Shown here in pieces: positions 30,948-62,533 of a DNA stretch of 64,000 nt (position 1 is its first letter; each line of letters starts with the position of its first letter). The notes under the pieces were generated by a model, which saw only the letters and a list, made by a program, of their open reading frames with translations, ran no database searches and was not told the DNA's origin. This stretch comes from Chlorokybus atmophyticus (lineage: Eukaryota > Plantae > Mesostigma and Chlorokybus algae): NCBI GenBank assembly GCA_009103225.1, contig RHPI01002272.1, positions 126,417 to 190,416 on the forward strand, read 5' to 3'. Made by a program: the position numbers and the translations under genes.

Positions 30948-31360
30948 CACCGGTAATTTTGGGACCCCCCGAGTCCTGATTATTCACGCCATCTCGTCTG
31001 AATTAATGACTTGATCCGTTTTACGCCTTCTGTCCGTGAATATCCAATGGTTATTGTACTATCTGTCCCATCCCTGCCAAAAGGAACAGCGTTCTTCACC
31101 CGCAAGACGCATTCATATTCAACGTACATACCACTGAACCTCGTTTCAACCCATACACTTTGAATTTCAAAATGAGTATTTCGTGCATATTCAAGGTCAG
31201 TCAAGTTGTACTTGATGAACGATATGGTACAATGAATTGTCAGTGCCCAAACAGCAGAATAATCACCCAGCGTGTGTGGTACTGGCTACGGCTTGCCGCG
31301 AAAACCCTGAGTCCTAAATACCATTGCATAGTCACCATCATATTCAGGGAACATATAGCA

Positions 31361-31514
31361 TGAAATACACCAAGTCCCAAGTGCCATCGAACATTCAACA
31401 CCACTTGACAAAACTGCCGATGTGAAATTACACCAAGTGCCAAGTGCCATCGAATGTTCAACACCACTTGGCAAAACTGCCGCTGTGAAATTACACTAAG
31501 TCCCAAGTGCCATT
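31361..31514. repeat. Left subterminal tandem repeat, about 63 bp x 2.5
   Basis: tgaaat(t)acaccaagt(c/g)ccaagtgccatcgaa...caaaactgccg repeated head to tail. Confidence 0.9.
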
Positions 31515-31849
31515 GAGAAGGCAAGCATGCTAATGGCTTGCATTCTAAATTCTATTAAGTACAAAGTTAGCTTGGACTACTATTACACAGCTGGCCAATG
31601 AACCTGTGCTTTTGACTACAATTTAGCTATGTACCAACCGCCTGCTACTTCACATCCGCCGTGACGTTTGCTGTGCTGGCATGCTGTCCATGAGTGTTCG
31701 CAGTCGTCTCCTTAAGCTGTCTGCCTCTTTTGGACGAAACCAATCCTTTTGCATCTGCGTTGCACACACCCACACCATCTGGTTGCTCAACACATGTCAA
31801 CCTACACGACTTTGCACTAGGGCAGCTGCCATATGGAGACATTCCAATG

Positions 31850-32720
31850 CATGAGCTGTACCTGCTGAAATATCGGGGCGTTTTGCTCGATTGGACCAGC
31901 TTGTATCCCATCTATAAACTTGTCAAGGTAAACCATGACAAACAGCCCGCACGCAACTCCATCCCTCTGCTGAGGGACCTGCACGAACACGCTATGTCAA
32001 TGCGGGCGAACCAAACGTAGGTGCATCTACATAGGGATTGTGCCGGGAGAGGGTTTGACCTCATCACCAGGCCAAAACAACATGTCCTACCCGTGGATCA
32101 AGTAGCGGGACGTTTGCGGGAGAGAAGCGCTGTTGCGACTCATTTCCATGCTTCCTGCCCCACATATAGTTTAGATAAGCGCGCCTTGGTCCGTCGACAT
32201 TGAGATGTAGACCAAGGGAGTCGAGATGGACGATCAAGGGCGGCGTGTTGCTTCCAAATTCCCCTCCAGGATTGCACACCAGCAGCAGACTCCAGTGAGT
32301 CCTGTGGCATGCAGACTTTACAGTGAGTCCATGCGAGCAAGTACAGCAGCACTACATTGCGAGAACTTGGCTTCACTCTCACCGGCTGTCTGGGTTGACA
32401 ATTGCTGCCAGCAAGTTCTTGGAAAACGGATCGTTCTCCCACCTATCTATCCTGTGATTGCCACTGTGCCATTTATGTTGTTCATGGCAGTGCACAATCT
32501 TGGTGTAGAAGTGCGGGTTGAACAGCCTCACGTGAATGCCTTCAGCTCTGCCCACGACCTCCTCTTCCTTATATCTGCGGGTGCGTGACACATACATGAC
32601 ACAGCTGCACAACACCAACAACGCAAGGCTCATACCTGCAAAAAAAGTGGAGCACGGTGTCGTTGAGCTCCTGTCTGCCGTCCAGCAACTTTCCGTCCGC
32701 TTCAAACACTGGCACCGCAT
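31850..32720 (-). CDS. Ulp1/SENP (peptidase C48) cysteine protease exons
   Basis: ELNDTVLHFFCRY; FNPHFYTKI; HWSLLLVCNPG (His); IVHLDSLG (Asp); VPQQRDGVACGLFV (oxyanion Gln and catalytic Cys, 31978-31937); separated by GT-AG introns. Confidence 0.85.
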
Positions 32721-33179
32721 CACGTGCATTTGCACTAGGGCAAATGAACAGGGGCACAGGTGTTGACGCCTCAACTTCAGCACCCGGCCCGTCCAGCACC
32801 ATGATGTCATCATCGCTGTCCACGAGGTCCACAACTGCTGCAGCCGTTGTGGTTCCCTGACTCGGGTGCTGGCGACGTTCCCCGTTGGCATCCTCATCAT
32901 CAAAATCCATCGGGACTGGCTCTGCAGCGTAAAAAGGTAGGATTATGCAATAAGCGCCGCAAACCAAGAAGCGCCAGCACGTTGCTGCTTACCACTCATA
33001 TCCTCATCCCCGCACTCTTGAACAAAGCTTTTACCCACGCTCTCAGTCGGTGGTTGTGAAACCCTACTGCTGCTGCCCGGCAGAGAACGACGCGCGAGGC
33101 TATCCCTTGGAAGCTGTGCCGGAGCCCCACCTTCTTCGTACGCAGCGCATTGCGAGCATGTGACCGAAAAGATGTTACC

Positions 33180-33518
33180 AACAGCATGACATTAACAGAG
33201 GCTGTTTGGGCATGTCGCGCATACTTGTCGAGCTGGTTCATTGCATCTGTGCACATGGCACCTGCGTTCCAGTGATCATCATTTTAGAACTTGTCGACTT
33301 CAGACACCATGCATTTACTGGATACTGAAGCTTACTTGTGCCTTGGGCATTCCCAATGGCCATCTTCCACAGGTGGTACAGTGACGCAGCGTGCGTGGTA
33401 GCTCTTCCAGCAGCCTTCTGCATCACAGCCAAATATGCTACCGCCATCCTTGCAGACAAAGCAATAGTCTTCGTGTTCACAATTCTCCAATGCATCCAGC
33501 TCTAGCCCCGGTCTCATC
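33180..33518 (-). CDS. PHD finger plus C5HCH-like zinc module (NSD-family-like), in-frame TAA at 33194-33192
   Basis: DYCFVCKDGGSIFGCDAEGCWKSYHARCV...WECPRHK | CHVHRCNEPARQVCATCPNSLC*CH after a phase-2 intron. Confidence 0.8.
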
Positions 33519-33749
33519 CTGCAAACCAAGGTCAGGTGCCCAGATCAGCAGTCACACAACAGTAGGTATATGCAGCATTACAATAGCAAAGAGTACCTCA
33601 TGTACTCAAAATGCCAGTCACGGCGTGTGGTCCACGACACCTCGCTCGAAGCGCTGTTGGTTTCGCTCTGGTCACCCTGCACCATGTGCATGTACAGAAG
33701 ATGGTTGTATGTGATGCCAAGACCCGGGAATTATGAGGACACCCCGATT

Positions 33750-36700
33750 CTCACAAACAAATCTGCTCTCACCGGAGTGTCGCGGTGCACAATTCGGCGC
33801 ACGAGGCTTCGCCTGTCTTTAACAAGCGCTACTGTTATTTTGGTGTCATACGGGTCAATACCCTCAAACCACTGGCCTTTGACCTGCCAGCAAGGACATG
33901 TATCACCCAATCTCACTCTACCATCAACTCGCAAAAACCGCTGCAACACACCTACTTACTAGGTTGCAATTAAGGTAGGTTTGTTCAGCAACGTGGGGCT
34001 TGTCTTTCCTCAGGATTGCAAAGCCTCCCATGTGCTGCACCTGGTTGCTCATGTACCACCTCGCTCTGAGGAGCTGGTGCTCCCAACCGGCTACCACGAC
34101 AACATAAAAAGACTGCACCTGCCATACCAGTGGACCTTCTTGGTTGGGTCATTCGAGTCACGCCCAACGGTAAACACTCCGCAGTCCATAGTGCGGAGCT
34201 TCTTCTCAGTGTCCTCTGCTCTGAACTGGCCAATGTCCTTGTAGCGCGCTCTGTAGTACCTCCTGATTTACTTTGGAAAAATGGGATCACTCAACAGCTC
34301 CATCTCGTGTTTTGTAAGCTCCCTATCAGGTCCACGCCAATGATGCAGCTCAGTCATGTGCTCCATGTCACTGGTCACGAGATTCCCTTGTGCTTGGGCC
34401 CTTTCGCGTGTCTTCCGCCGTTTTTCAACAGCCCGACTGAATTCTCTGTTTACCAACCCATTGTGGACTCATAATATGCAGGGGACATTGCGTACCAAAC
34501 AACGATTGCTGAAGCAACTTACTCTTTTAGCTGCCTGTACTCATCGTCATTTTCGGCCAACCACCACTCCAGCTCCTGCCTGATCTTGCTATCTTTCTCA
34601 CACTCAACACGGTGTCTGCGCCCGCAGAGGACATAGTCATCATCATCTCGCTCCTTGCCCGATTGCAGACTGATGCCGACGAAAAGCCTCTTCAAGGTGT
34701 CCATGTAAGTGTTCAACATGAGCTGGATGGAGTATCTGCAGACATAACTTGCACTTAACAAAAGTCAAAGAACGAGAGTACGTAAAAGGTTGCATGCAAC
34801 TTTCAGTTGGCCCACACTTGCCTTTTGCAGATGCTTGCTTCCACATGCTGCCTGGCAAAAATCATGCGCTTCACCCACTGCATAAATCGTTCGTCGGCCC
34901 ACTCCCAGTGATCGCGCACCGGACCAAGCCACATGCATTGCTCTGGTAGATGGCCAAGGAGGTGCAGCATCATTGTGAGCGAAGTCCGCGGGAAGAACAG
35001 CTCCACCTCAGACTGTGCCTCATGCACCAGCACCTGCGATGAATAATGCAAGTCATGCAACCTGTAGAAGCTAAGCATACACATGGAAGGTATGGTTAAA
35101 GCCCTAACCTGCAGTTCTTCAAGGTGTGACTGCTTCACTTCCAATGCAGTCAGCCGCTGATAGATGTCGCAGAGTTTGAGGATTGTTTTCTTCTGATCTT
35201 CTCCAATGTCATGAGCAGAGCGCAGCACGTACTGGAAAATCACGGACCACAAGTTGTGCTTGTCGTGCGATTTCATCGAGCCTGTGTGCTCACTACATCA
35301 GATTGTTAAGTAGACACAATGTGCAATGCAAGGACACTGAGTTGATTTGCACGCAGTTGAGAACCATGGTGGTTGTCTCACCTAAATGCTTGGTGAAAGA
35401 TTGCAGCTTAAAGCCGAAAGTGCTTGGAACCCTCACGCCTGAGAGTAATTGCTCAATCAGCCCTGCATCCGTGATTGCCCATGGAGCCTGAGGTTTGACC
35501 TTAACTGCAACTTCCTTACCGTCTTTCGTCATCTATGTCTGCAACGCATCGTCACAAAGTCAAACGAGTTGGCAGGCAGTCAGCACAAGTGTCGCATAAG
35601 CCTGCAATACCTGTAGCCAAAGTTCTGGCATACGACCTTGCTGCTGCAGTTCTTCTCGAGTCTCATTGCTGTCGCGCAATCCAGCAAGCAGATTGGTCAA
35701 ATTGGTTGCGAGATTGGCAAAAATGTGCATAGGGCCAATCACATGACCTTTTACAGGTTTCTGTAAAGGCATCCAATAGGGAAGGTCGTGAAAATAGCTT
35801 AGGCCAAGGATTCCGGAGGACTTTGAAGGATGTTTCTTGGAGTGAAGTGGTCGCTTGCTGTTGCGGGATGTCATGGCGTACCTGATCACATAGCATCCAT
35901 TGGTGAAGCTTGATTGACATAGCTACGTTCAGCTATGTCAATTGATTGGTTGCTCACCGGTACACACTTTCTGCAGTCCGCATGGGAGGTGGAGGTCTGT
36001 GTTCTGGTTGGGGCCAACGCTCATCAACTCGGTAGGGATGGTCATTTTGGTAAGTACCGGCGGTAGCCTTGATAAATCACCTTTTTGAGGAGTTCCACAT
36101 GTTCTCCACTGCACTCGCATTTGGAACAGCCAAAGATGGCTCCATGAGCCATCTGCATGGCTGCTTTTGCGAGAGCTGCGCAACCATCATTACATGTTTC
36201 AGAGAAGGCAAACATGGTTGCCATACCAGTCAGATAGTACATTCATAGACACTGATGGCCAACACTTGCTGCTTGCGTACCTGGGTAATCATGGATTACA
36301 ATCTCCAAGATAGATCTGCACCGGAAAACTTTGTCGCGGTGGCTGTCATATATGTCGATGCCTACAACAAACACCAGCAGCTGAGATGCCCTACACATTC
36401 TAGTCCAAAGCAGTTTGAGAGCATGTCTAATGTATCGAGAGCTGGCTTGTTCAAACTACATTGAAACCATACCTTCTCAAAGGGTTCCCAACTGGTCAAT
36501 GATTGGCTTGAGATAGGCCTGTAGATTCTCTGGCTGTTTGGGACCAGGTATTACCGCAGCTAGAAAGATAGTGTCGGTCTCGTGCATTTTGGCAATGGGC
36601 AGGTTCAGCACAGAAATTGTGACAAGCAAAAATTCATAATTCCCTGCAAGTCCACAAACACCTCGATCAATGCCAACTGTGAATTTACACACTGCAATGA

Positions 36701-38370
36701 CAGCACAGGTAAAAGGCACAATCACTACCTTTATGCGGATCTTTGAAAGGGCTCATCCCGTTAATAAACATTGCCAGCCGCACATTACGCGGTTCTTTGA
36801 TAAACCGGATGTAGCGTTCTTCTGTATGCTTGAACATTGGCGAGTCTGACAGCAGCAACCACATGAATAATAGAAAACATGTAAGAATTCAGGCTGCATT
36901 GGGCATCAACTTGTCAATCCACACTGCCATATACATACCGTGTATGGATCGTATAACCCCATCCTCACTGCGATTGGTGTGCGCTGTCATCTTCAAAGCG
37001 ACACTAGGCTTCAGGTAAAGAGACCTCAGAGCAGCAGGCACGTCAAAGTAACGTGAAATTTTTTCAGGAACTTGTCGACCTCCAAGATTGCGGTGGCGAG
37101 GAGCCTTGCAGACTGCAGGCCATAGGAAGTTTGCATGCTGACAGGTGATCCCATGACAACTCAATCACACAAGAAATGCTACAATAGCTGACCTTTGCAT
37201 AATTTCATGTTGGCATGTCGGCCATAATACACCATGTGGTCACAACAACAGGCGTCATACGCGTGGAAGCCCATGTTGAGGCTTGCAAGGCATTTCAGTA
37301 GCTCTTGCATGCTGCCTGGCATCTGATTCTCCTTGGGCAAAACAACATCACGCACCAACCTGGCACACAAAGTCAAGTTCAATTGAAAATTGGACATTGA
37401 TGTCTTTGCAGAATGTGTTTTGTATGATTTTGTAAACCTCTTATCCACCGACCTTAGCAGTTTGTTCATGAAGTTCAAGGGTATTCGATGTAGCTGAGCG
37501 AGAACCAATAGCAGCATGGAAATGCCCAAAGGGGTTGTACGAGAGCCGGCAACAATAGGGTTGCTTGCATTGTCCAACAGCGCAGCATTTACCTTGTCAA
37601 GCAGCATTGCCTCGTCATCACCATGAGTGTCATACTGCTGCGACTCCACATCGGTATTGGAGTCTTGGTCTACGCCATCACCATCACCATCAACTTGCTC
37701 CGCATGTACTTGATTAGCGGTTGAGGGGGAGTGCGCTGGCATATCATGCTCGTTCAGAACTGTGTATTCTGGAGTTCTGGCACCTTGATGTCCTCGCGAT
37801 ACAGGATGCTCACTTCCAGAGAATGCTGGGTGCAATTCGCTCTGTTCCCCATGATCACACGGATGACATCCTGCCAACGCGAATAAATGCACTGGCACAT
37901 GGACAATGACGTAAGCAATCAACTTGCAATTAGATTAGGTCGTACCTGCTGGGCGCATGTGATGTGCAACATTGACATGAGATGCAACACTCGTTTGCGA
38001 TGGCGTGGCTGGGTGCAGTTGTTCAGCAGCGTAGTTCCATGCATAAAGTGTTTCGGTGTGATGGACAGCATCATCTGAAGCGGGCAAGCTTGGTAATCAG
38101 ATCAGAGCCTGTTGATGAAGTACACCAACTCGGGAAGATGACTCTTGTACCTGACAGCATGTGCGAGGATGCAGCCGCAATAACAGCGTCAGCCTCTTCA
38201 AGTTCATTGGGTTCGAGAAGATCACGGTATTGCGGTTCAACAGCTTTAGGAGTGCCCATCCACATCCTTGTGCCATGGTACTCATGGTTTTGGGCCCTAG
38301 TGATGTGCTTGTGTGTGAACACTTTGCTCCCTTGGCAATCTTCGCAGAAACACCTGCGATTGTAGCTCAT
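33750..38370 (-). pseudogene. Multi-exon CACTA Tnp2 transposase (probably inactivated in this copy)
   Basis: N-terminal CFCEDC...H; LPKENQMP...YDACCCD; PRNVRLAMFINGMSPF (Asn where the family has Asp, 36762-36760); IPGPKQPENLQAYLKPIIDQL; CNDG...GCSKC; IGPMHIFANL; LHLLGHLPEQ...LGPVRDHWEWADERFM; WYGRVQSF...LLRARWY. A +1 frameshift lies in the A4 run near 36047. Confidence 0.9.
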
Positions 38371-38731
38371 GCTACAAAGATGTTTAGTCAACTATTATCC
38401 TGGCATACAACCACCAAACTATCTAGAGCCCTGACCTGATATCGCCGCCGCCGCCGCTGATACCGCCTTCGCCGCCGCTCTAGCATCGCAGTTGCAGAAT
38501 TAGGGTTTAGACCCGTCAATCCTAAATTGCAAGCTAGATCCAGTATAAGCCGCGGCTTCAATCCGGATGTGCTCCGTAATTTGCGTACGTGCTCCAGTTT
38601 TTCTTCCTTGAAGTGCATCAGCTATTAGGGTTTGAATGGTAGGTTGCGTGGCGGCAGTATGCGCGGCGTCAAGGTGTGCAGTTTCTGCAGAGCATACTTG
38701 GTTAGAAACGGCAACTTGAAACGGTGGCAAC

Positions 38732-39112
38732 TTGAAACGGTTGCAACAGCATGAAGAGAAGTGCAAGCTGTACAGTGAGCAGTATGGCTTCTATGAAGCC
38801 TGCTGGCACCATAAGGCCCGGGGAGATAATGTGAGGCAGTGCAGGCTTCTAGCAAAATGCATGAAGCCAGACTTCTTTGTCGAGGAATGCACTTGCCTGC
38901 AATGCTCGCTCTCCAAGTTTGAGTGGGACGGCGAGCCCATGGATTACCTGCCTTGGGCCCGGCCTGGAGCATATCAGGATGGGCAGGAGTGTGGTTCGAG
39001 TTGGTGGTCAAAGCTGTCTGAGACTGCAAGACTTGCCTGGTCGCGAGCTCGATTGTTGGCCCAGGCCACCACCCCTTCTCGTAACTCGCACACCATGCGA
39101 CTCAAGCGGTAG
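38732..39112 (+). CDS. Cys-rich ORF of unknown function overlapping the 5' end of the methyltransferase frame
   Basis: 126-codon open frame ending 8 nt before the MTase core; no recognised domain. It may be a frameshifted N-terminal part of the MTase. Confidence 0.35.
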   Translation: MKRLQQHEEKCKLYSEQYGFYEACWHHKARGDNVRQCRLLAKCMKPDFFVEECTCLQCSLSKFEWDGEPMDYLPWARPGAYQDGQECGSSWWSKLSETARLAWSRARLLAQATTPSRNSHTMRLKR

Positions 39113-39824
39113 ACGTTACAGGCCACGCGCATTGGATCTCTTTTGTGGTGCCGGTGGCGTTGCTATGGGTCTGTACAGGGCTGGGTTTGATGTTGAGGGT
39201 ATAGACATTAAGCCACAGCCGGCATACCCATTCAAGATCTGCCAGATGGATGCAATGGACGCTGACCTGTCAGCATACGATGCAGTGTGGGCAAGTCCTC
39301 CATGCCAAGCTCTTAGTGGAGCCATTCCCATGACACAACGGTCCGCATACGGATATCGATGGGATCACGTCAACCTGATTGACCCCATAAGAGCCAAGTT
39401 GCAGTCAAGCGGCAAGGCATGGGTGATAGAGAATGTTGCAGGCGCGTCAGGACACATGACAACTCACCTGAAGCTGTGTGGCAGTATGTTCAAGTTGGAT
39501 GTGTATCGCTATCGCATCTTCGAGACAAACCCTCCAGTGCGCTCAGACTTACAATGCAACCACACTGGTTCTGCACTTGGAGAGCTGGCCACCCACCCGG
39601 AGCAGCGCCGGCAGTTGCTACCTGGGGAGAGGCAAATCTACCCGGTATACGGCCAAACATCTTGCCGTGGTACGATTGCAGGGTGGCAGTCTGCCATGCA
39701 GGTGGAGTGGATGGATGCGGAATCGGAAATCAAGAATGCTATTCCACCTACTTACTCTGAACATGTAGGCAGGCTGTTGCTGGAAGCGATAGGTTTCAAT
39801 GTCGATTACCCTCCTTTTTACTGA
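38877..39824 (+). CDS. C5 cytosine DNA methyltransferase, compact and intronless (core about 39120-39824; start codon uncertain)
   Basis: Motif I DLFCGAGG, motif IV ASPPCQ, motif VI IENVAG, motif VIII LCGSMF...YRYRIFE, motif X IKNAIPP, in canonical order with a very short variable region. Confidence 0.92.
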   Translation: MSRNALACNARSPSLSGTASPWITCLGPGLEHIRMGRSVVRVGGQSCLRLQDLPGRELDCWPRPPPLLVTRTPCDSSGRRYRPRALDLFCGAGGVAMGLYRAGFDVEGIDIKPQPAYPFKICQMDAMDADLSAYDAVWASPPCQALSGAIPMTQRSAYGYRWDHVNLIDPIRAKLQSSGKAWVIENVAGASGHMTTHLKLCGSMFKLDVYRYRIFETNPPVRSDLQCNHTGSALGELATHPEQRRQLLPGERQIYPVYGQTSCRGTIAGWQSAMQVEWMDAESEIKNAIPPTYSEHVGRLLLEAIGFNVDYPPFY

Positions 39825-39984
39825 GACACGTAGAGGACTTTGCAGTTGTAAGCTCTCTTGATTGCCACAGAGGTCTCATTTGTGATCACACCTGCAGAAT
39901 GGTAAGGTTTCACTGAGGTTGCCGCTGCTGCTGCTCTTTGTGCTCGCGCCGCTGCTTCCGCTGCTGCCGCTTCTGCTCACGCTC

Positions 39985-41150
39985 TTAAAAGAGTTGCTGC
40001 TTCAGCTGCTCCTGCTGCTCGAGTGTTGGCTGCTGGCCTATCGCTGCTCGCTCGCGCTCATGTTGACGTTTCTTGGCCAGTTTCTTGCTTTGCCGCCGAT
40101 CATCAATGTGTTCGCGTTTTTGCAACTTTAACATCTCCATGGGGTTTGCTTTGCGTGCGGAAAAATTCTCTCGATTGAGATGGTGCTTTTGCAAAGTCTC
40201 ATTCAGCTCGTTTTCGTTTTGCTTGCAAGTGCGCACAAGCTCGTTGAACTGGTCATCCCGCCAATCCTGGTTCAAAGGACCCTTCGCAACGCAATTGCGC
40301 ACTCCTTTCCTAAGCCCCTTGAGAAAAAGCTGTAGTTTGAGGGCATCATCCATCTGCAGCGCTGTTGCGTTGGCAACCATACACAGATGTTCGAACTGCG
40401 CGTGAAACTCCTCCACTTTGCGACCTGCCTGCCGCAGATGGCGCAGCTTCTTAAAAGCGCCGGCAGGGGTGTTGTCCATTTGCGCAGGAGCTCGGCTGCG
40501 AGTACGACGGCGTTTGCGCTTCTTGCTTGTGGTGGCACGACGAGGAACACCAGAGGAAAGACTACTGGTTGATGTGCCAGATTCATCAGAAGAGCTCTCA
40601 TTGCCCTGCATTGCATCAAGCTCGGTGCCACATTGCGCAACTCCACACTTGCTCTTGCACGCAGATAGCATGACAGTGCTCACCTGTCCATCAGCTGGGC
40701 TCATGGGTTCCGCCTGATTCTGGACTTCCACCTCAACCTCTTGGTTGACCTGTGCCTGCTTGGCCTTGGCCTCAGGCTGCTCCTGCCTGGCCCTGGCTTC
40801 AGTCTCAGCCTGCTCCTGCCTGGCCTTAGCTTCAGCATCAGCCTTGGTCTTCACCTCGCTCGCCTGCCTGGCCTTGGCCTCAGCCTGCTCCTGCCTGGCC
40901 CTGGCTTCAGTTTCAGCCTGCTCCTGCCTGGCCTTGGCTTCAGCATTAGCCTTGGTCTTCGCCTCAGCCTGCTCCTGCCTGGCCTTGGCCTGTGCTTGCT
41001 GCTTCAAGCTGGCCTCGACCTTCTTCATGCACTCTGGACCCATCCTCAGCTTTGGCTTTTGAACCTTCGCGCTTGCTTGGGTCTCAACCTTGCCTTCTCC
41101 CTTGGCCTGGGCCTCAGCCTCTTGCACACACACAGCTTGCGATTGCACAG
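39985..41150 (-). CDS. Ala/Glu/Gln/Lys repeat region plus retrotransposon-gag (capsid C-terminal)-like domain; probable 3' part of the OTU gene
   Basis: (A/T)EA(K/R)ARQEQ repeats, then LRHLRQAGRKVEEFHAQFEHLC...DDALKLQLFLKGLRKGVR, resembling the LxQxGSVxEYxxxF...FxxGL gag motif. Confidence 0.6.
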
Positions 41151-41159
41151 GGGTCTACT

Positions 41160-42490
41160 TGAAGATGTAGGCGCCTGGAGTGGAGCCGATTTGACACTGG
41201 GTGCTGATTGCGGAGGACCATCAGGGAACAGGCAGCGCAGGACTTCTGGTGGCATGTCACAGAGCTGCCATAAGAGCCTACCACTCGCATCGCCAAGAGA
41301 CATGTAATGCGCGCAGGCCTTGCTCGCGTCTGTATTGCCAATAATCACATGGCCAGCCATTTTCTGAACATCCTCGCCGATCAGCACCACAAGCTTGATA
41401 TACTGCAGCTTTCCTTTGTCATCAGGTTTAAGATACCTCCCGTCATCCCCTTTGCTGAGTACCCCCTTGTCCTCCGCTTCTAGGATGTACTTGCAGTCAC
41501 CAACCTCCCTGAGCTGCACGGTGCCAATGCGAATGCCCAGTGTGTGCGCCAGCAGCGCCAATTGCAGTTGATCCGCATAAACACCCTCATGACTGATCAC
41601 TTTCTTCAGAGCAACAACAGCTGCATCACCTTCATCTTTTCCATCGAGAACCGTTGTTACCCGGCATTTCTTGGCGGCCTTCTTGTAGTCCTCGCCCCCA
41701 TGTCACCAGAGGCCCCGTAGTTACGATACGTCCGTACCCAACGAACGTTGACCTGGTCAGCACACATCTTGCGCAACTTGGCAGCTTGATCTCTCGTATG
41801 CAGCTCTTTGCCGTTGTCCAGCACAATGCTTCGCCAGAAAGCCTCATTGTTAATTGCGCCCACGCGTTCCAGGCATGCAGCGTTGACGGGAGGGCGCGAC
41901 TGGGCAATGCAAGAGTAGAAGCAGTTGCCATCAGCATAGGCGTCATAGAGCCGCAGCTTTGTCTCATGCAGCAGCAGCCCAATCAGCTCCGCCTCATCGC
42001 CCGGTTGTGGAGGAGGTAGACCAGACTCCCAACGACCACCAGTAGATGCACGACCCGTTGATGTGCCCACTTCAGCTTTAGGTTCTCCGACAAAGTTCCC
42101 AAGGTCAATACTCGCAGCTGCTGCCTGCTTGTCACACATCTTGCTGAGCTGCCGCCGCAAGAACTGATCCAACTTGACTCTCCATTCATGCGAGAGGGCG
42201 AGCAAATCAGCTTTCTCCAACCGCTGCTTGTATTTGACCACCAGCTCTTCCCATGTAGGGCAGTCTTCCTTTTCCTCTCTCCATACTTTTGCATAACCTA
42301 CGCAAAGGGCCTTGAAATCATTGAAAACCTCTTCATCGGTCTTGTTTGCCCGGATCTGCGGCTTCTTCACCTCTTTTCCTGGTTGCAATGACCGGTATGA
42401 GCACGAGTTGGTGTGAGAAATTTTACACATTCCAAGAGTACCTGCACGCTGCTGCTGACCACTTGGCAAGACCTTCTGCTTTGTTGCCAT
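41160..42490 (-). CDS. OTU-family cysteine protease (deubiquitinase-like); needs a splice or frameshift near 41690-41750
   Basis: ADGNCFYSCIAQS (Cys box), YADQLQLALLAHTLGIRIGTV (helical box), CAHYMSL (His box). Confidence 0.75.
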
Positions 42491-43504
42491 TATGAACAAC
42501 CTGTGTCGACACACAGAGAAACTTACAAGCAGACACAAAGTGATCAAGTGAGCCAAGTTTAAAACTGAGCAAGCAGGGGCCTTACGCACGAGGCTGCCCC
42601 CTACGATCAGCATGAGCAAGAATGGGCCTTGAGAGCGGTCAGCAAAACAAGCGCAAACAAACAGGAGCGCGGCATGCACTACACCTGGTTTGCGAATTCT
42701 TCAAACCCTACCAAGCTGCCTATGAAGCTGCAAGAGATCTACAAAAAGCGGGTGGAGCACCAATGCGAAAAGGCTTGCAGTACACCACCATAGCAACCAC
42801 ACCGCCTCCCGCTCACACCGCCGCCACCACCGGCCGCCGCCACCGCCGCCACAACCGCCGCCTCAGACCACGTCACGCAAGAAATGCTGCACTACTGCAG
42901 GTGCTCAACTCTAAACCCTACAACCGTGCACTATTCATTGAAGCAACCCTGTACCGCGCGTCAGGCGGCGCTGTACTGGGCAAGGGTCATTGAATGATGT
43001 ATTGCATATTGGGTGCAATCGATCCATTTATAAAAATGCATGTAGAGGGTTTGAATTGCACCAGGTAGTCCTATATACAGCAACCAGGTATAGGCCGTCA
43101 CTATAGAACAACCACATGGAAACAAAGACAGTAGTTGCACATGTGAAGGTTGTGTAATTTTGTGCGTGATACAAGTGCACATACAATTCCAGCACTTGCA
43201 CTAGACCAGCCCCCTTAGCTGTAGTTGTTGTGGTTGTGCCTGGTGTTGCTGGTTAATGTGACCGCTGGTGCACGGTGTGTGTTTATCGGGGGCGCCGCTA
43301 TTTTCCTTATACAATGTGGCGTGCATATGCGCATGCATTAGACATGTAACAGACTGCGCATGTAAGCATGTTGCGTACAGAAAACGCAAGACATGCGTGA
43401 TGGAGTACCCCGTATGCACAGACAGCAGCCGCTATAACAGCAGGTTCTCATTGCAGGCAGGCAGGAAGCACATGTATACAACGCCACTGGCCTATTGGAA
43501 CTGG

Positions 43505-43817
43505 TCTTATGGCCCACTGATCGAGCAGCTAGGGGCCTACTGGAACCTCAACAGCAAGACATTGATAGAGCAGCTATGTACAAGGTGAAAACTGCTGCTG
43601 ACTCAATTGGAGTAGTCATAGCCGTGACCATCGCTGTCGTAGTCTCCCATGGTGTCTCTTATGGTGTCTCTTATGGCCCGCTGATCGAGCAGCTAGGGGC
43701 CTACTGGAACCTCAACAGCAAGACACTGATAGAGCAGCTATGTACAAGGTGAAAACTGCTACTGACTCAATTGGAGTAGCCATAGCCGTGACCATCGCTG
43801 TCGTAGTCTCCCATGGT
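43505..43817. repeat. Direct duplication of about 150 bp (period 164)
   Basis: tcttatggccc...gtagtctcccatggtg at 43505 and 43669. Confidence 0.92.
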
Positions 43818-44200
43818 GGCCTCGGTATACTCTGACAGCTCACTATCGGATGCAGCGAGTGCCAGGAAGAGGTTGTAAATCTCCTCCCTCACGTTTTCGG
43901 GGAGATTGGGCACCCTCCGGATGCGATAGCGCATGCGATGGAACTTGTACTTGTAGCGGGCGGCACGTACATTCTCCGCTATAACATCCTCCAGTTCTAC
44001 ACCAAGCCTGTCTATCTCTTGACGCTGTGCAGACACCTGCGTTGCTAGAGTTTGGTCACAATGCATGCTACCAACAGATATCAGCAGCTTACAGATAGTG
44101 CAAGTCATACCTTCCTGCGCAAGTCGGCAACGGTTTGCCGCAGCTCTCTCACGTCGTAGCGCAGCCAAGCCGATATGCACAAGCATGCCTGCCAACAGAG
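43767..44200 (-). CDS. Coiled-coil ORF of unknown function
   Basis: Open frame with QVSAQRQEIDRLGVELEDVIAENVR...EEIYNLFL and an acidic tail; true 5' end unclear. Confidence 0.4.
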
Positions 44201-44201
44201 A

Positions 44202-44510
44202 CATACACAAACCAGAGCAAGCCTGCACAACAAGAAGGTTTACACATAGTGAGGTGGAATACCAGATCAAAGGGCGTGGCGGCGAGGGAAGAAGGCGATG
44301 GCGCATGCCAACAGAGACTGGGCAAGAAGAGGCTGGCCGTGCGTTGACTAACTTGGTCAACACACAAACACATATGCACACACACATGCACAGACAATGA
44401 AGCATCTCAACTTTGTGCATACACAAACCAGAGCAAGCCTGCACAACAAGAAGGTTTACACACAGTGAGGTGGAATACCAGATCAAAGGGCGTGGCGGCG
44501 AGGGAAGAAG
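44202..44510. repeat. Direct duplication of about 93 bp (period 216)
   Basis: catacacaaaccagagc...ggcgagggaagaag at 44202 and 44418. Confidence 0.9.
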
Positions 44511-45235
44511 CACTGTGGGAAGAGAGACGGCGGCGGCGCCTTCGGAAACAAGACTACAACTGCAACAACCTTGACGCCCACATGCACACAACCGGCGTGG
44601 ACGAGGGTTTCATAATGTGGCACCCTGTCAAGTCTCAGCCCATTGCTGAAAGCCTAGTGCGTCAGCAGAGGACTGAAAATTGACAGTCGCAAAGTCACCC
44701 CCGACGCTGCCGCCCACGCCGCTGATACTGCCGCCGCCCACGCCGCCCGCAACTCCAAACCCTAATTCGTACCTGATCGGTCCTGTTGAGCGATATTCTA
44801 GTACCTGACACCCGCCTCTCAAATTGAGAGGCATGTGAGGGGTGTAACAGCTGGCCAAACGGCTGTTTGCTCAACTCAGTGCAAAAGTTTCACTGTGCTG
44901 CTATCGGTTTCATGCTCAATTCCTCATGACCATAAAGGCTTTATGGTAAAGCACAGCTTTCTTGTAGACATGCCGGCAAGGTTTGTGCATGCACTGGCAT
45001 TTGCTTGCTAGCTTGCTGTTCAGCTGGACTAAGTCATGGTAGCAGCTGGCATGGAGCTGAACGACGTGCTTCGGCAAGGTAAAGTACGGTTTGCTTGATG
45101 TGTGAAGCACATGCACATGGCCAAGCAGCTGCAGTCAATTGAGGCAGTTAACTGAGGTTTCTGGTTGAACAGTGTTGTGGCTGTGCACAGCTTGACAAGC
45201 AGTTTGACCTACTAGTTTGAGGTGGTGCAGTGGTC

Positions 45236-47982
45236 ATGTCAGGCACGACGTCTGGTGGGCGGTCTAGCGACCTGAGTGGAGGCTGGGACAACTTGGACGA
45301 TGAGATCTGGGGCAAAAGTGCTGCTGCACCATCAGATGAGCAGCTCCAGCGTGAGTGGGAAAAATCTGAGGAGACGGCTCACCTCCGTGACCTTGAGACC
45401 ACAGCAATGATGCCCTTGAAAGTGAGCTTACAATGATGTGCAAGCAACCACTCTCGATATGAGCATGTGCTGCCGGAGTCTGTCTCGATTTCTGCCGGAG
45501 TTTGTCTCGATTTCTGAGGTTTGCACAAGAAACTCACACTGTTGATATTGTTGTAACAGCGCTCTAGTATGCAATATTTGCACTGTGCAGGCACTAAAGG
45601 TCCTTCATTGGCGGGGTCAGCATCATACCAGTGATCGCCGCGATATCACAAAGCTGGCGGACAAGGGCCGGATTTGCTATGAGTACTGTCGTTTGCTACC
45701 GGGGAAGACCCAGACGAAGCAGGACCCACTTAAGTTTGCTCTTGCAGTTACATGCAAGCATCTGCTTCACCCAGAGTTCCGTCCTGAAAAGGTTGGCAAG
45801 GTTGTGAGAGTGTCACCAGCTGTCATGCAACATTGTTCAAGCTTGAAGGATTTTGCATTCAGTGGCAGTCACCACTCTGGGCCTGGTGCAGGCAAAAACG
45901 ATAATTTAGGACTTTCTTACCAACAAAAAGGCATATACCAACGCCAAGCACAAAGAAGGGCAGAGAGGGAAGAGTAGGGAACAATACAAGGAGATGATAG
46001 AGCGCGCTGAAGCAGGGGGGTTTGAGCGAAAGCGCAAGGGAGCGCCCAGGGACAAGAGCAACAAGGTGTGTGCCATGCAGTGACTGAGTTGTCTGTGCAA
46101 TGTTTGCATGTCTTAAGTGCCTTTGCCATGTGCATAATTGCAGGTCAAAGACAAGTTAAAGGCAAGAGACAGCTCCTCGCTGCACCACTCTGCCAGCGAC
46201 GCCGAGAATGCCACCTCACAGGGTGAGCTTCGGTTTGGTAAATGACTATGTTGAGAACGAAATGCTTTGTGTTTGATGGTGCCTTATGTATGCAGGGTGT
46301 GTGGTGTGTATGATAGTCCCTTGTGCATGCACGGCGCCCACGCGTTCACCTCCCGCCAGCAACGCCAGCGACGACCCAAATGTCACCTCGCAGCGTGAAC
46401 CATGTTTTGCGCGCGCGGGCCGCTGCGGGAGGTACTGTGTATACACTGTTCTGATCGGTGCCTTGTGCGTGCGATAGGTAACAAGGAAGGCACTGCGCCA
46501 CAACCCACAAGGTCACCCGCTACTGGTTCACAGGTTAGATGTCTGTCATCATTACACGAGCAGCCAAATGCTTGTACTCTCCTGTACATGTCATCATGAC
46601 CGTTCATGACTGCTGTGTTCAGGCACCTGCCAAACAAGATGCTGATGTGCGTGATACCAGCTCAGCTCTCAAGGTATGCAACAACGACTGGAGCAAGTAT
46701 CTAACAAGCATATCTGTTTTTGCAACAGAAACCGCACCACATGTAGACACAACACGCCGCGAATGTCATGGAGCTCATGAAAGAAAAGGAAGGCAGAGGG
46801 CAAGGGAAGCGCAAAGTGTCTGGTGATGTACGCACCACTCTGCTTCACAACAAATGGCACAGCATTACGTTGTGGCTCACAATCTGATGTGCATGCTGTT
46901 GGCAGGAGACTGAGGTGTCAAGCCCCCAAAAGAAAGCAAAGACTGTTCGCTCAATCCCGGCTCCCTACAAGACTAAGGAGGCAGGCCCCTCGACTGGCAA
47001 GCAGGAGAAGATGTTGGATAAAAAGAGCGGCAAGCAAAAGGAGGTATGAAGGACCATCTATGTGCGCTTATAGGCTTCTTGGGTCCTTCTGGTTGCAGAA
47101 AAACTGTCACTGCAGCAGACTCGCATGCATGCCTATCAATTGTAAGCTTGATAACACGGCGTGCCACCTGGTTGCACAGGATGAGCCATCGTATTCAGAA
47201 GTATCCGAAATAGACAAAAGCGAGGACAACGATGAAGATGGCGCCAAGGACGATGCGAACAGCCCCAACGACAGCGACAACGACTCCCAAAAGGCAGTTT
47301 TTTTTTCAAGCGCTATATAGGAGAGTGCATCTGTGTATGTGTCTGCCAGTTGATGTGTTTGTCACTTGCATGCGCAGGAAGACCTGAGCGACAAGCATGA
47401 CACTGCACCGACGATGAAGGTTGGTGATGAAGTCAAGTTGTTCATCAATGGGCGTAAGGAGCCAGTAGGGGAGGCGCACGTAAGCGACATCAAGCCTGTC
47501 AACAAGTTTTATCGCAAGAAGATTGGAGAGGGTGACATGGTGGTCCAGTTCACCCGCAGTCTTCACATCACTAGGACCAGACGTCCTGGTGCAGGGGAAG
47601 AAGAGGTTGTGCCTTTGCCAATCAGCTTCAAGCGTGATGGGGTTGGAGTGCAAGTGACCCACTTGAGAGGTGAGCGATAATTGCGTGCTGACTGTGCGTG
47701 CGTTATGACAACACACTGCGTCTGACGTATTCATGTGTGGTTGATGCATGTGAAGAGTGCGAGGCGGGGTTGTTGCTACTTTGGCCTACTAGGTTGATAA
47801 AGACCATCAAGGTGAGGGAGCAAAGGAAGGCACATCCACACCGCGGGGGAGAGGCCGTGGGAAGGGGAGTCGGGGTGGTCGGGGTGGTCGGGGTGGTCGG
47901 GGGCGAAGCAGCAGGAAGTAGATATTGCCGCAGGAGGTTTCCACCTGCAAGTGCAGCTCTGGGTAGCAGACATGCATTGTAG
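45236..47982 (+). CDS. Multi-exon CACTA ORF2 (TnpA/Tnp1-like C-terminal domain); exon structure only partly resolved
   Basis: First exon ends MMPLK|gtgag. Last exons read VGEAHVSDIKP...IGEGDMVVQF...VVPLPISF...THLR|gtgag...LLLLWPTRLI, matching the V..LP.P...I.WP pattern of En/Spm ORF2 proteins. Confidence 0.6.
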
Positions 47983-48214
47983 ACAGCATTGAATGTGTTG
48001 TTGTAAGTTGGCTGCCATTCAGCTGACATTGCTGGGCTGGCTGGACGGACTGCTGTGAATATTATTAGTAGCACTGCATATATCGGTCTTGTTCTACTTC
48101 ATATCACTTGAACATTCATAGTAACATTGACGGTCGTAAAACAGCAGCTTACCATTGTTCGACTTCATTGCCATTGAATAACTACTCACATGTAGGACTT
48201 AGTGTGCAGGCTAG

Positions 48215-48570
48215 ATCACTATGAGTATTCAAACAATACATGCGTGCATATTCAGTGGTGTAGTACGGTTGCAGCACCACACCATACAGGGTGAATTTTT
48301 AACTCTACTGCAAGTGAAAGTTTTGGGTGACTGTAAGTGTTCAAACAATCCCTGCGTGCATATTCAAGTCTGTTGCAGCTGCCATATGGAATACTACAGG
48401 TATTCAAACGAACCCTGCCTGTGAATGTTCGACGCTTTTGCAAGAGTCTGTCTTGCCTAACTACAAGAATTCAAACGATTCCTGCTTGGATATTCAGTGG
48501 TGTAATACATGTGATGGTCACAGCACTACACCATACAGGTTGAATGTACAGCTCCACTGTAAGTGAATAA
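48215..48570. repeat. Right subterminal degenerate repeats of CACTA-2
   Basis: Four copies of ttcaaac-a/g-a...tgc...atattc and two of tattcagtggtgta...caccatacagg.tgaat. Confidence 0.7.
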
Positions 48571-49069
48571 ATGCCCCACATATAGGACTAGTGTGCAATT
48601 TAATTGCCACAGGGATATTCACCGACAATTACATTGAACAGGCTTTAACACCTTTCAGACCAAACGGTCTGAATATTCACCTCGACATGCAGGAGCCAGG
48701 GACGCCGTCTAGGCTATTCACCCCTGTTTTTGTTGACTATTCAGACCAAACAGTATGAAAATTCACAAATCGGGGGGGCTCAGAATTACCGGTGGACAAG
48801 GAGTCGCCAACATTGTGGCATCGGAGGTTCGGGCATCTCAGCTACGTCAACCTCACTCGCCCTATCGCTGAGAAGATGGTCAAGGGCATCCATCTCAGCA
48901 CTGAAGAACTCAAGAATGCATCAGGTGCACTTTGTGAACCACCTGCCTGATTGCAAAGCAGCATGCTCTGCCATTCCCATCATCCTCTTCTAGCAGTCAG
49001 CATCCTTGCGAGCTTGTGCACATGGATGTCTGTGGCCCTATGCGCATTGTGGCAAAGGGAGAGGCCAGG

Positions 49070-62510: not shown

Positions 62511-62533
62511 NCCCCCCCCCCCCCCCCCCCCCC
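62511..62533. repeat. Poly-C run with an ambiguous base
   Basis: n followed by 22 Cs. Confidence 0.9.

What the first reader, a model, noticed from the sequence alone, without database searches (positions are those of the whole stretch)
30948..48794. 17.8-kb CACCG-ended DNA transposon carrying a chromatin and ubiquitin-like-modification toolkit
Seen: exact boundaries (25-bp TIRs, GAC TSD, restorable Copia target) show that all cargo moved as one unit. The cargo is a Tnp2 transposase, PHD/C5HCH reader, Ulp1/SENP protease, C5 DNA methyltransferase, OTU protease with a gag-like domain, orphan ORFs and a TnpA-like ORF2, arranged in divergent pairs. Established: Ulp1 and OTU cargo are each known from some transposons, and DNMT capture is known mainly from retrotransposons. 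Inference: a DNA writer, a histone reader, a deSUMOylase and a deubiquitinase in one CACTA could form an anti-silencing or self-regulation system. This copy is damaged (Asp-to-Asn at 36762-36760, frameshift near 36047, stop at 33194), so intact siblings should be sought.
Basis: partly seen in the sequence, partly recalled or inferred. Interest (0 to 1): 0.92.

Follow-up and report, generated by a model that had tools for sequence, protein, structure and literature searches.

The report
Dead CACTA transposon carrying a DNA methyltransferase
A precisely bounded 17.8-kb cut-and-paste transposon sits inside a Copia retrotransposon; besides its now-broken transposase it carries an intact phage-type cytosine DNA methyltransferase and protease and histone-reader genes, an unusual cargo whose function is untested.

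Summary
Window 30948-48794 is one CACTA/EnSpm-type DNA transposon. It has 25-bp inverted ends (22/25 matching, CACCG...CGGTG), a GAC target duplication, and two uninterrupted Copia paralogs in the same window that show the empty site.

Confirmed cargo:
- A Tnp2 transposase (Transposase_21 and DUF4218). The three reported lesions are real: Asp-to-Asn, a frameshift, and a stop in the zinc finger.
- A spliced PHD-C5HCH-Ulp1/C48 gene with all Ulp1 catalytic residues.
- A single-exon C5 DNA methyltransferase that keeps every family-invariant residue and folds as a DNMT.
- A gag-like domain.

OTU rests on motifs only. "TnpA-like ORF2" has no sequence support.

The DNMT is not DNMT1/3-like. It belongs to a short phage/bacterial family (phrog_363) and groups with rare DNMTs that carry an inserted methyl-CpG-binding (MBD) domain.

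No sibling element or close homolog of any cargo gene turned up in any searchable collection. The host, probably a green alga, is absent from them. Whether the cargo is a family trait or under selection therefore could not be tested.

Each cargo class has a precedent in transposons. I found no report of a DNMT in a CACTA element. The "anti-silencing toolkit" reading remains an inference. Verdict: real, a new variant of a known kind, moderately to highly interesting.

The parts
30945..30947 (.). Left copy of the 3-bp target-site duplication (GAC)
   Evidence: The paralogous empty sites carry a single GAC.
30948..30972 (+). Left terminal inverted repeat, CACCGGTAATTTTGGGACCCCCCGA
   Evidence: (I1).
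30973..31650 (.). Left subterminal repeat region: TATTCA-type motifs and 63-bp tandem units at 31363-31516
   Evidence: D9, D10; 17 of 23 TATTCA motifs lie in the terminal 2 x 700 bp, against 1.8 expected.
31820..32808 (-). Ulp1/SENP (peptidase C48) catalytic domain in four exons joined by GT-AG introns of about 70-100 nt. The LNDTV, FNPHFYTKI, HWSLLLV (His), LDSLG (Asp) and VPQQRDGVACG (Gln, Cys) motifs are all present.
   Evidence: Peptidase_C48 profile positions 95-120 (E 0.014) and 160-190 (E 0.0088). Yeast Ulp1 structure 1euv residues 30-60 is the only PDB hit.
33192..33544 (-). PHD finger followed, after a GT-AG intron, by a C5HCH finger. The C5HCH finger is interrupted by an in-frame stop at 33194-33192 (CPNSLC*CH).
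   Evidence: PHD_NSD 29.2 bits against a cut-off of 23.9. C5HCH E 0.023 on the truncated piece. Stop seen. Intron seen.
34779..37934 (-). Tnp2-family (CACTA/EnSpm) transposase gene with several exons. The first DDE Asp is replaced by Asn (36762-36760) and there is a 1-nt frameshift at about 36046. The second Asp (HDYPG), the Glu (ADERF), the C2C motif (GCSKCEC) and the H3H motif (HLLGH) are present.
   Evidence: Transposase_21 pieces 1.5e-5 and 2e-3. DUF4218 1e-9. Collinear tblastn of plant and metagenomic Tnp2 proteins from 37478 to 34779. Lesions.
38979..39824 (+). Single-exon C5 DNA methyltransferase ORF (281 aa from the first ATG), divergent from the transposase gene. Motifs FCGAGG, SPPCQ, IENV, RYRIFE and IPP are intact.
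   Evidence: DNA_methylase 2.3e-5. phrog_363 1.4e-26. 3394 homologs at 40-49% identity. All 34 invariant columns kept. AlphaFold pLDDT 86.7, and Foldseek matches DNMT3A/B, DNMT1 and M.HaeIII at probability 1.0.
39988..42490 (-). OTU-like cysteine-protease motifs (YADGNCFYSC; VYADQLQLALLAHTLGIRI; CAHYMSL), then an Ala/Gln/Glu-rich repeat region, then a gag-like domain. Probably one gene, convergent with the DNMT. There is a frame change at about 41700.
   Evidence: Motifs read. Nairovirus OTU is the best PDB hit, E 0.25. Pfam finds no OTU. No homologs at E<=1. Retrotrans_gag 27.0 bits against a cut-off of 24.1 on 39988-40584. Repeats (D1, D4, D8).
42600..45500 (.). Unassigned middle region with ORF pieces on both strands and recent tandem duplications (43505-43818 with a 164-bp period; 44202-44510 with a 216-bp period)
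   Evidence: D3, D5. No Pfam hits.
45221..47979 (+). Plus-strand ORF pieces at the position where CACTA elements carry their second (TnpA-type) gene. No detectable similarity to any family.
   Evidence: No Pfam hit even at E<=10.
48100..48769 (.). Right subterminal repeat region: units of about 49 nt at 48218-48508 and TTCAGACCAAAC..GTCTGAATATTCAC units at 48654 and 48740
   Evidence: D6, D7, D11, D20, I10..
48770..48794 (-). Right terminal inverted repeat (reverse complement CACCGGTAATTCTGAGCCCCCCCGA)
48795..48797 (.). Right copy of the target-site duplication (GAC)

Best explanation
This is a defective copy of a large autonomous CACTA/EnSpm (Tnp2) DNA transposon in a eukaryote, probably a green alga.

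Shown: it inserted by cut-and-paste as one 17,847-bp unit into the gag-pol junction of a Copia element and duplicated GAC. It has the architecture of the superfamily: CAC...GTG inverted ends, subterminal short repeats, a multi-exon DDE transposase, and a second gene region near the other end. The transposase of this copy can no longer work (first catalytic Asp changed to Asn, plus a frameshift), so the copy could move again only if another copy supplied transposase.

Also shown: between the ends it carries complete accessory genes. These are a spliced PHD-C5HCH-Ulp1/C48 protease gene, a compact C5 DNA methyltransferase of phage/bacterial type whose base composition matches the rest of the element, and a probable OTU-like protease fused to a repeat region and a gag-like domain.

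Inferred: these are accessory genes of the transposon family rather than random captured fragments. I infer that they act on the host's chromatin-based control of the element. The PHD-C5HCH module would bring a SUMO protease to histone tails. The OTU-like protease would remove ubiquitin-type marks. The DNMT would write 5mC. Whether the net effect is escape from silencing, self-limitation, or marking of the element's ends is not known.
For: Transposon identity and unit movement.

Tnp2 transposase and its lesions.

Ulp1: three collinear exon matches (15.7 + 16.3 bits to Peptidase_C48, plus yeast Ulp1 as the only PDB hit), with His, Asp, Gln and Cys all present and canonical GT-AG introns.

PHD_NSD scores above its cut-off.

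DNMT: complete motifs and all 34 invariant columns, a confident DNMT fold, and membership of phrog_363. Its CpG o/e (0.64) and TpG+CpA o/e (1.47) equal those of the rest of the element. No repeats or duplications flank it that would mark a nested insertion.

Precedents: C48 and OTU are treated as specific accessory domains of cut-and-paste transposons (PMC5751038). EnSpm and other DNA transposons carry TET/JBP dioxygenases (PMC12730594). VANDAL elements carry the VANC/Ulp1 anti-silencing protein (PMC13317346). Retrotransposons carry DNMTs (PMC5890265).
Against: No sibling copy or close relative of the transposase, DNMT or OTU piece was found anywhere. It is therefore unknown whether the cargo is a family trait or is unique to this copy.

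This copy carries at least three lesions, one of them in the PHD-C5HCH-Ulp1 gene, so nothing here shows current function.

OTU is not statistically supported. The ORF2 region is unassigned.

An intact 843-nt DNMT ORF is expected fairly often by chance at this lesion density.
Confidence: 0.6

Rival explanations
1. Passive cargo. The protease, reader and DNMT genes are passenger DNA that a CACTA element picked up by transduplication of host genes or by horizontal or viral DNA. They ride along with no role in the element's life cycle and are decaying.
For: CACTA and MULE elements are well known for capturing host sequences, and most captures become pseudogenes (PMC13317346). A stop codon lies in the C5HCH finger, and there is a possible further frameshift in the OTU-like gene. 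No second copy with this cargo was found. The DNMT has no introns in an intron-rich setting, and its nearest relatives are phage, bacterial or virus-like.
Against: The cargo consists of whole genes with complete domains, catalytic residues and their own introns, not exon fragments. C48 and OTU recur as accessory domains of DNA transposons in distant lineages (PMC5751038). The DNMT composition matches the element, which argues for long residence.
Confidence: 0.3
2. The four activities (5mC writer, histone reader, deSUMOylase, deubiquitinase) form one coordinated anti-silencing or self-regulation system, selected as a set.
For: All four lie inside one mobile unit in divergent or convergent gene pairs. 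There are precedents for single anti-silencing or epigenetic genes in transposons (PMC13317346, PMC12730594, PMC5890265).
Against: There is no evidence of co-conservation, co-expression or interaction. OTU is uncertain. A writer of 5mC is normally a silencing activity, so its role in an anti-silencing kit is not obvious. This copy is dead.
Confidence: 0.15
3. Composite origin. The DNMT, or another block, entered after the CACTA insertion as a separate nested insertion of a virus or another element, and so did not move with the CACTA.
For: The nearest DNMT relatives sit on dense, same-strand, virus-like contigs.
Against: No terminal repeats, target duplication or composition break surrounds the DNMT. 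No part of the element matches any other repeat in the window. The DNMT lies between two other element genes in a compact arrangement.
Confidence: 0.05

Closest known systems
CACTA / EnSpm (Tnp2, Transposase_21) DNA transposons, e.g. maize En/Spm and Chlamydomonas Tcr3 (named as EnSpm in PMC9940879)
   Same: CAC...GTG inverted ends, 3-bp target duplication, subterminal short repeats, multi-exon DDE transposase with Transposase_21 and DUF4218 and the C2C and H3H motifs, and a second gene region near the other end.
   Different: The ends read CACCG rather than CACTA. The transposase is only about 21-44% identical to any protein in 1.84 billion representatives. The element is 17.8 kb and carries three extra genes.
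TET/JBP-carrying fungal DNA transposons (EnSpm, Plavaka, Kyakuja, Zisupton and others; PMC12730594)
   Same: A cut-and-paste transposon, including EnSpm lineages, carries a separate gene for an enzyme that acts on cytosine methylation.
   Different: Those carry an eraser-type dioxygenase in fungi. This one carries a 5mC writer, plus proteases and a histone reader, in what appears to be a green-algal genome.
DNMT-bearing retrotransposons (SymbioLINE-Dnmt and SymbioDIRS-Dnmt3 of Symbiodinium; a Dnmt3-carrying retrotransposon of Klebsormidium; PMC5890265)
   Same: A transposable element that encodes its own C5 cytosine methyltransferase with intact catalytic motifs.
   Different: Those are class I elements, and at least the DIRS and Klebsormidium ones carry eukaryotic Dnmt3-type enzymes. 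Here the element is a class II CACTA, and the enzyme is a short (about 230 aa) phage/bacterial-type DNMT encoded as a separate gene.
VANDAL / Kaonashi MULEs with VANC-Ulp1 (KIU) genes in plants (PMC13317346)
   Same: A DNA transposon that carries a Ulp1/C48 protease domain in an accessory gene. VANC family proteins cause hypomethylation of their own elements.
   Different: A different superfamily (MULE). The Ulp1 domain there is fused to VANC, not to PHD-C5HCH. No DNMT or OTU is present.
Short phage/bacterial C5 methyltransferases (phrog_363) and the rare MBD-inserted relatives P0001, P0002 and P0260
   Same: Same compact fold, motifs and length. The window enzyme groups with the MBD-inserted ones (SH-aLRT 96) and shares their VDYPP C-terminal tail.
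   Different: The window enzyme has no MBD insert, is 42-49% identical at best, and lies in a eukaryotic transposon.

Membership tests
CACTA/EnSpm superfamily | Terminal inverted repeats beginning CAC and ending GTG | tested here: met
   22 of 25 bases match, CACCG...CGGTG.
CACTA/EnSpm superfamily | 3-bp target-site duplication, verified against an empty site | tested here: met
   GAC flanks both ends, and two paralogous Copia copies carry a single GAC.
CACTA/EnSpm superfamily | Tnp2-type transposase (Transposase_21 and DUF4218) | tested here: met
   DUF4218 scores 38.7 bits against a cut-off of 27. Two collinear Transposase_21 pieces score 24.7 and 17.8 bits; each is below the 28.6 cut-off alone. 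Tblastn of Tnp2 proteins is collinear.
CACTA/EnSpm superfamily | Intact DDE catalytic triad | tested here: not met
   The first Asp is Asn in this copy (FING where homologs have DGF). The second Asp and the Glu are present. This marks a dead copy of the family, not a non-member.
CACTA/EnSpm superfamily | Subterminal repeated motifs at both ends | tested here: met
   TATTCA-type motifs are about 9-fold enriched in the terminal 700 bp of each end. Repeat families are listed.
CACTA/EnSpm superfamily | TnpA-type second protein (Pfam Transposase_24) | tested here: not met
   No Pfam hit for any ORF piece in 45221-47979, even at E<=10. TnpA proteins are poorly conserved, so this does not exclude an analogue.
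C5 DNA methyltransferase (PF00145) | Motifs I (FxGxG), IV (PC), VI (ENV), VIII and X in order | tested here: met
   FCGAGG, SPPCQ, IENV, RYRIFE and IPP are present, and all 34 family-invariant columns are kept. Pfam scores 24.4 bits against a cut-off of 22.
C5 DNA methyltransferase (PF00145) | DNMT catalytic-domain fold | tested here: met
   Model pLDDT 86.7. Foldseek probability 1.0 to DNMT3A/B, DNMT1 and M.HaeIII.
C5 DNA methyltransferase (PF00145) | Methyltransferase activity and sequence specificity | not testable with these tools
   Requires expression followed by bisulfite or EM-seq.
Ulp1/SENP protease (peptidase C48) | Catalytic His, Asp, Gln and Cys in order | tested here: met
   HWSLLLV, LDSLG and VPQQRDGVACG lie on collinear exons.
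Ulp1/SENP protease (peptidase C48) | Pfam Peptidase_C48 above the gathering score | tested here: inconclusive
   The domain is split by introns. Individual pieces score 15.7 and 16.3 bits against a cut-off of 20.7. Their rough sum exceeds the cut-off. A third piece matches yeast Ulp1 in the PDB.
OTU deubiquitinase | Cys box (DGNC) and His box (HY) in order | tested here: met
   YADGNCFYSC, then CAHYMSL about 150 residues downstream on the same strand.
OTU deubiquitinase | Statistically significant similarity to the family or its fold | tested here: inconclusive
   No Pfam OTU hit at E<=10. The best PDB hits are nairovirus OTU domains at E 0.25. No homolog at E<=1. The single-sequence model is unusable, pLDDT 44.9.
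NSD-type PHD-C5HCH module | PHD finger above the cut-off, followed by C5HCH | tested here: met
   PHD_NSD scores 29.2 bits against 23.9. The C5HCH piece scores only 15.3 bits against 26.3 because a stop truncates it, but it is in the right position.
Retrotransposon gag (PF03732) | Pfam score above the gathering cut-off | tested here: met
   27.0 bits against 24.1 on 39988-40584. The match covers only the C-terminal half of the profile. There is no similarity to the Gypsy gag in the window.

The most novel reading that the evidence does not exclude
An autonomous CACTA family has domesticated a virus- or phage-derived compact C5 methyltransferase as its own 5mC writer. It uses this, together with a histone-tail-guided SUMO protease and a ubiquitin-type protease, to set the epigenetic state of its own copies. 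One possibility is methylation of its ends so that transposition is tied to replication. Another is shaping host methylation so that the element is tolerated. This would be the first DNA-transposon counterpart of the DNMT-bearing retrotransposons.
Probability: 0.15. Interest if true: 0.85.

Novelty: new variant of a known kind. Interest (0 to 1): 0.62.

Why it matters
Transposons that encode enzymes of the host's own silencing machinery are rare, and they are informative about the arms race between genomes and mobile DNA. Known cases are DNMTs in retrotransposons, TET/JBP dioxygenases in fungal DNA transposons, and VANC in plant MULEs.

A cut-and-paste CACTA element with a complete cytosine methyltransferase of phage type, next to SUMO- and ubiquitin-type proteases and a histone reader, would add a new route. 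It would also show how a prokaryotic or viral methyltransferase can enter a eukaryotic genome and spread. And it would supply a compact, naturally mobile 5mC writer whose specificity is easy to test.

If the cargo turns out to be unique to this dead copy, the element is just a large CACTA with passengers.

Tried and rejected
1. Sibling search failed everywhere.
- Exact ORF look-ups were not in the 15-billion-protein collection.
- The DNMT search gave at most 49% identity.
- The DUF4218 exon against 1.84 billion representatives gave only 119 weak hits, best 1.6e-9.
- The OTU exon gave no hit at E<=1.
- Metagenome and viral contig scans with the DNMT gave at most 47% identity.
- There is no other copy in the window by blastn or tblastx.
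- The Copia polyprotein's best hit is only 54% identical, and the named hits are Haematococcus at 49% and Chlorella at 45%. The host species is therefore absent from the collections, and the absence of siblings says nothing about copy number.

2. Genomic context of the nearest Tnp2 relatives (L003-L007) showed no DNMT, OTU or C48 neighbours.

3. OTU tests by Pfam at E<=10, by PDB sequence search and by a single-sequence AlphaFold model (pLDDT 44.9) were all inconclusive.

Domains split by introns were therefore scored piece by piece.

5. Nested insertion of the DNMT was rejected. There are no flanking repeats and no composition break.

6. I considered taking the intact DNMT ORF as evidence of selection and rejected it. 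At the observed lesion density, an 843-nt ORF remains open by chance in a large fraction of cases.

7. Literature searches for a CACTA/EnSpm element with a DNMT, or with this domain combination, found none. Repbase and Dfam could not be consulted.

Full report
OBSERVATION

The element is real and its boundaries are exact. The left end at 30948 reads CACCGGTAATTTTGGGACCCCCCGA. The reverse complement of 48770-48794 reads CACCGGTAATTCTGAGCCCCCCCGA, so 22 of 25 bases match. This pair is the longest inverted repeat in the region and extends at 75% identity over 57 nt (I1). A degenerate 16-mer of the end occurs only at these two places in the 64-kb window, in inverted orientation, against 0.11 expected. 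GAC flanks both ends.

Deleting 30948-48797 (the element plus one GAC) restores the Copia reading frame (...VVKD|KESPTLWHRRFGHLSYVNL). The restored sequence aligns without a gap at 97.1% over 2,066 bp to an intact Copia paralog at 60021-57964. That paralog and a second one at about 22.1 kb both read GAAGGAC|AAGGAG with a single GAC. So the 17,847 bp entered as one unit and made a 3-bp duplication.

The host Copia has LTRs at 29155-29579 and 51963-52387 that are 95.1% identical. The insertion is therefore younger than that divergence.

Short TATTCA-type motifs are concentrated in the terminal 700 bp of each end: 17 of 23 copies, against 1.8 expected. There are tandem and dispersed subterminal units as well (D6, D7, D9, D10, D20). 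This is the usual CACTA arrangement.

No other copy or fragment of this element exists in the window, at either DNA or translated level.

GENES

All genes except the DNMT are broken into short exons. Domains therefore had to be scored on stop-free pieces.

Transposase (minus strand, about 37934-34779):
- DUF4218 scores 1e-9. Transposase_21 appears on two collinear pieces at 1.5e-5 and 2e-3.
- Sixteen Tnp2 proteins map collinearly from 37478 to 34779. They are plant CACTA proteins from Asparagus, Tanacetum and Actinidia, plus unnamed metagenomic ones.
- The lesion claims hold. Where homologs read EPRNVRLGL..DGFNPF, this copy reads EPRNVRLAMFINGMSPF, so the first DDE Asp is Asn at 36762-36760.
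- The conserved RRYLP-x-HPYR motif is split between two frames at about 36046, in an A-run (YRRYLPK*, then NDHPYRVDE).
- The second Asp (HDYPG), the Glu (ADERF), and the C2C and H3H motifs are present.

PHD-C5HCH-Ulp1 (same strand, downstream of the transposase):
- A PHD finger scores 29.2 bits for PHD_NSD, above the cut-off.
- After a GT-AG intron comes a C5HCH finger carrying an in-frame stop at 33194-33192 (CPNSLC*CH).
- A Ulp1/C48 domain follows in four exons joined by canonical GT-AG introns of about 70-100 nt.
- Three exon pieces hit the family at collinear positions. One matches yeast Ulp1 structure 1euv residues 30-60, the only PDB hit. Two match Peptidase_C48 profile positions 95-120 and 160-190.
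- The catalytic His (HWSLLLV), Asp (LDSLG), and Gln and Cys (VPQQRDGVACG) are all present.

DNMT (38979-39824, plus strand, divergent from the transposase with about 1 kb between them):
- It is a single open exon.
- It has 3,394 relatives in the protein collection, nearly all 200-240 aa and 40-49% identical. It matches phrog_363 "DNA methyltransferase" at 1.4e-26. The same family occurs on phage contigs.
- It keeps all 34 columns that are invariant in a 17-sequence alignment, including FCGAGG, SPPCQ, IENV and R.R.FE.
- The AlphaFold model is confident (pLDDT 86.7, pTM 0.86). It matches DNMT3A/B, DNMT1 and M.HaeIII catalytic domains with probability 1.0.
- A profile of the family reaches solved C5 methyltransferases mainly through motifs I to VI.
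- In a quick maximum-likelihood tree it falls with three unusual proteins (P0001, P0002, P0260), SH-aLRT 96. These share its VDYPP C-terminal tail and a longer motif IV region. Unlike the window protein, they have a methyl-CpG-binding domain inserted where the target-recognition region lies.
- Those three proteins come from 63% GC contigs with dense same-strand ORFs, which look viral.
- The window DNMT has the same dinucleotide signature as the rest of the element (CpG o/e 0.64, TpG+CpA 1.47). Nothing flanking it suggests a nested insertion.

OTU-like, repeat and gag-like gene (39988-42490, minus strand, convergent with the DNMT):
- It shows YADGNCFYSC, then VYADQLQLALLAHTLGIRI, then CAHYMSL, in the order expected for an OTU protease.
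- An Ala/Gln/Glu-rich repeat region follows. Then comes a gag-like domain that passes the Pfam cut-off when the piece is trimmed: 27.0 bits against 24.1.
- OTU itself is not statistically supported. There is no Pfam hit even at E<=10. The best solved structures are nairovirus OTU domains at E 0.25. No homolog was found at E<=1. The single-sequence structure model is unusable.
- The two OTU halves are in different frames and only 53 nt apart, with no good splice signals and a G5 run between them. This may be one more frameshift rather than an intron.

Remaining regions:
- The middle region (42.6-45.5 kb) holds ORF pieces and very recent tandem duplications, and has no family hits.
- The plus-strand ORF pieces at 45.2-48.0 kb sit where CACTA elements have their second gene. 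They match nothing. "TnpA-like" is therefore a positional guess.

HOST AND CONTEXT

The window is a nest of transposons. It holds three Copia copies, a chromodomain Gypsy, and a second, unrelated Tnp2 fragment at about 17.2-19.0 kb.

The Copia polyprotein's best database match is 54% identical. The only named relatives are from the green algae Haematococcus (49%) and Chlorella (45%). The named Tnp2 relatives are angiosperm CACTA proteins. Introns are canonical GT-AG and short.

I infer a green-lineage host, probably an alga, that is not represented in the searchable collections. Exact ORFs from the window are absent from the 15-billion-protein set, which fits this. It is also why the sibling test failed. 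The failure says nothing about copy number in the host.

MECHANISM

Shown: cut-and-paste insertion as a unit, the CACTA architecture, an inactive transposase in this copy, and complete accessory genes.

Inferred: the accessory genes belong to the transposon family and act on chromatin-based control. The reasons are as follows.
- The cargo consists of whole genes with catalytic residues and their own introns, not exon fragments.
- C48 and OTU recur as accessory domains of cut-and-paste transposons (PMC5751038).
- Ulp1 is part of the VANC-type anti-silencing genes of VANDAL MULEs (PMC13317346).
- EnSpm and other DNA transposons carry TET/JBP dioxygenases (PMC12730594).
- Retrotransposons of dinoflagellates and a charophyte carry DNMTs (PMC5890265).
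- The window's overall CpG depletion with TpG/CpA excess is compatible with CG methylation in the host. It does not prove it.

Not shown: that the cargo is conserved across copies, that it is expressed or active, or that the four activities cooperate. The intact DNMT ORF does not show selection, given how few lesions the element has.

COMPARISON AND NOVELTY

By ends, target duplication, transposase and subterminal repeats this is a member of CACTA/EnSpm. The failed DDE test marks a dead copy.

Each cargo type has a precedent in some transposon. I found no report of a C5 DNMT in a CACTA or other cut-and-paste eukaryotic transposon, nor of this combination. Repbase and Dfam could not be checked, so the claim of novelty is provisional.

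The DNMT differs in kind from at least some of those in retrotransposons. It is a compact phage/bacterial type, whereas the DIRS and Klebsormidium cases carry Dnmt3.

I rate the finding a new variant of a known kind, with interest 0.62. It would rise sharply if intact, expressed siblings share the cargo. It would fall to ordinary if the cargo is unique to this copy.

Noticed in passing
window 17160-19030 (+): A second, unrelated Tnp2-type transposase fragment. Transposase_21 scores 2.8e-5 on 17477-17914, and the first catalytic motif is intact (HSDGF). It ends where a Copia LTR begins at about 19040. It shows no nucleotide or tblastx similarity to the 17.8-kb element.
   Followed up: partly
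L001:606-1568, L002:30-1043, L019:5065-6078: The nearest relatives of the window DNMT are short C5 methyltransferases with a methyl-CpG-binding domain (Pfam MBD, 1.2e-8 and 3.2e-4) inserted at the target-recognition position. They sit on 63% GC contigs with dense same-strand ORFs, which look virus-like. In L001 the upstream ORF has a weak 2OG-Fe(II) oxygenase hit. A DNMT with a built-in 5mC reader would be interesting in its own right.
   Followed up: partly
window 41693-41747 (-): The two halves of the OTU-like domain lie in different frames only 53 nt apart. There is no convincing splice donor or acceptor, and a G5 run lies between them. This may be a fourth lesion (a frameshift) or a homopolymer assembly error rather than an intron.
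   Followed up: partly
whole window; 23300-26833: CpG o/e is 0.54-0.70 with a TpG+CpA excess (about 1.45-1.5) across the window, including the element and the Copia copies. The chromodomain Gypsy pol ORF has CpG o/e 0.96. This could reflect CG methylation of older repeats and a younger or unmethylated Gypsy.
   Followed up: no
window 43505-43818, 44202-44510, 40754-40999: Very recent internal tandem duplications lie inside the element: 150 nt at 97%, 93 nt at 99%, and 104-nt coding repeats at 94% in the coiled-coil part of the OTU/gag gene.
   Followed up: no
window 7490-8896 (-): A 468-aa ORF with TPR_10/TPR_12 repeats, possibly an exon of an NLR-like or kinesin-light-chain-like host gene. 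It is the only non-transposon coding signal seen in the window.
   Followed up: no
L003-L007: Intronless Tnp2 transposases (Transposase_21 plus DUF4218, 504-814 aa) occur on long marine and sediment metagenome contigs. They are among the nearest relatives of the window's transposase exon. No DNMT, OTU or C48 neighbours were recorded.
   Followed up: partly
window 2562-3037: An assembly gap of 476 N, plus single N at 62511, 63579 and 63685.
   Followed up: no
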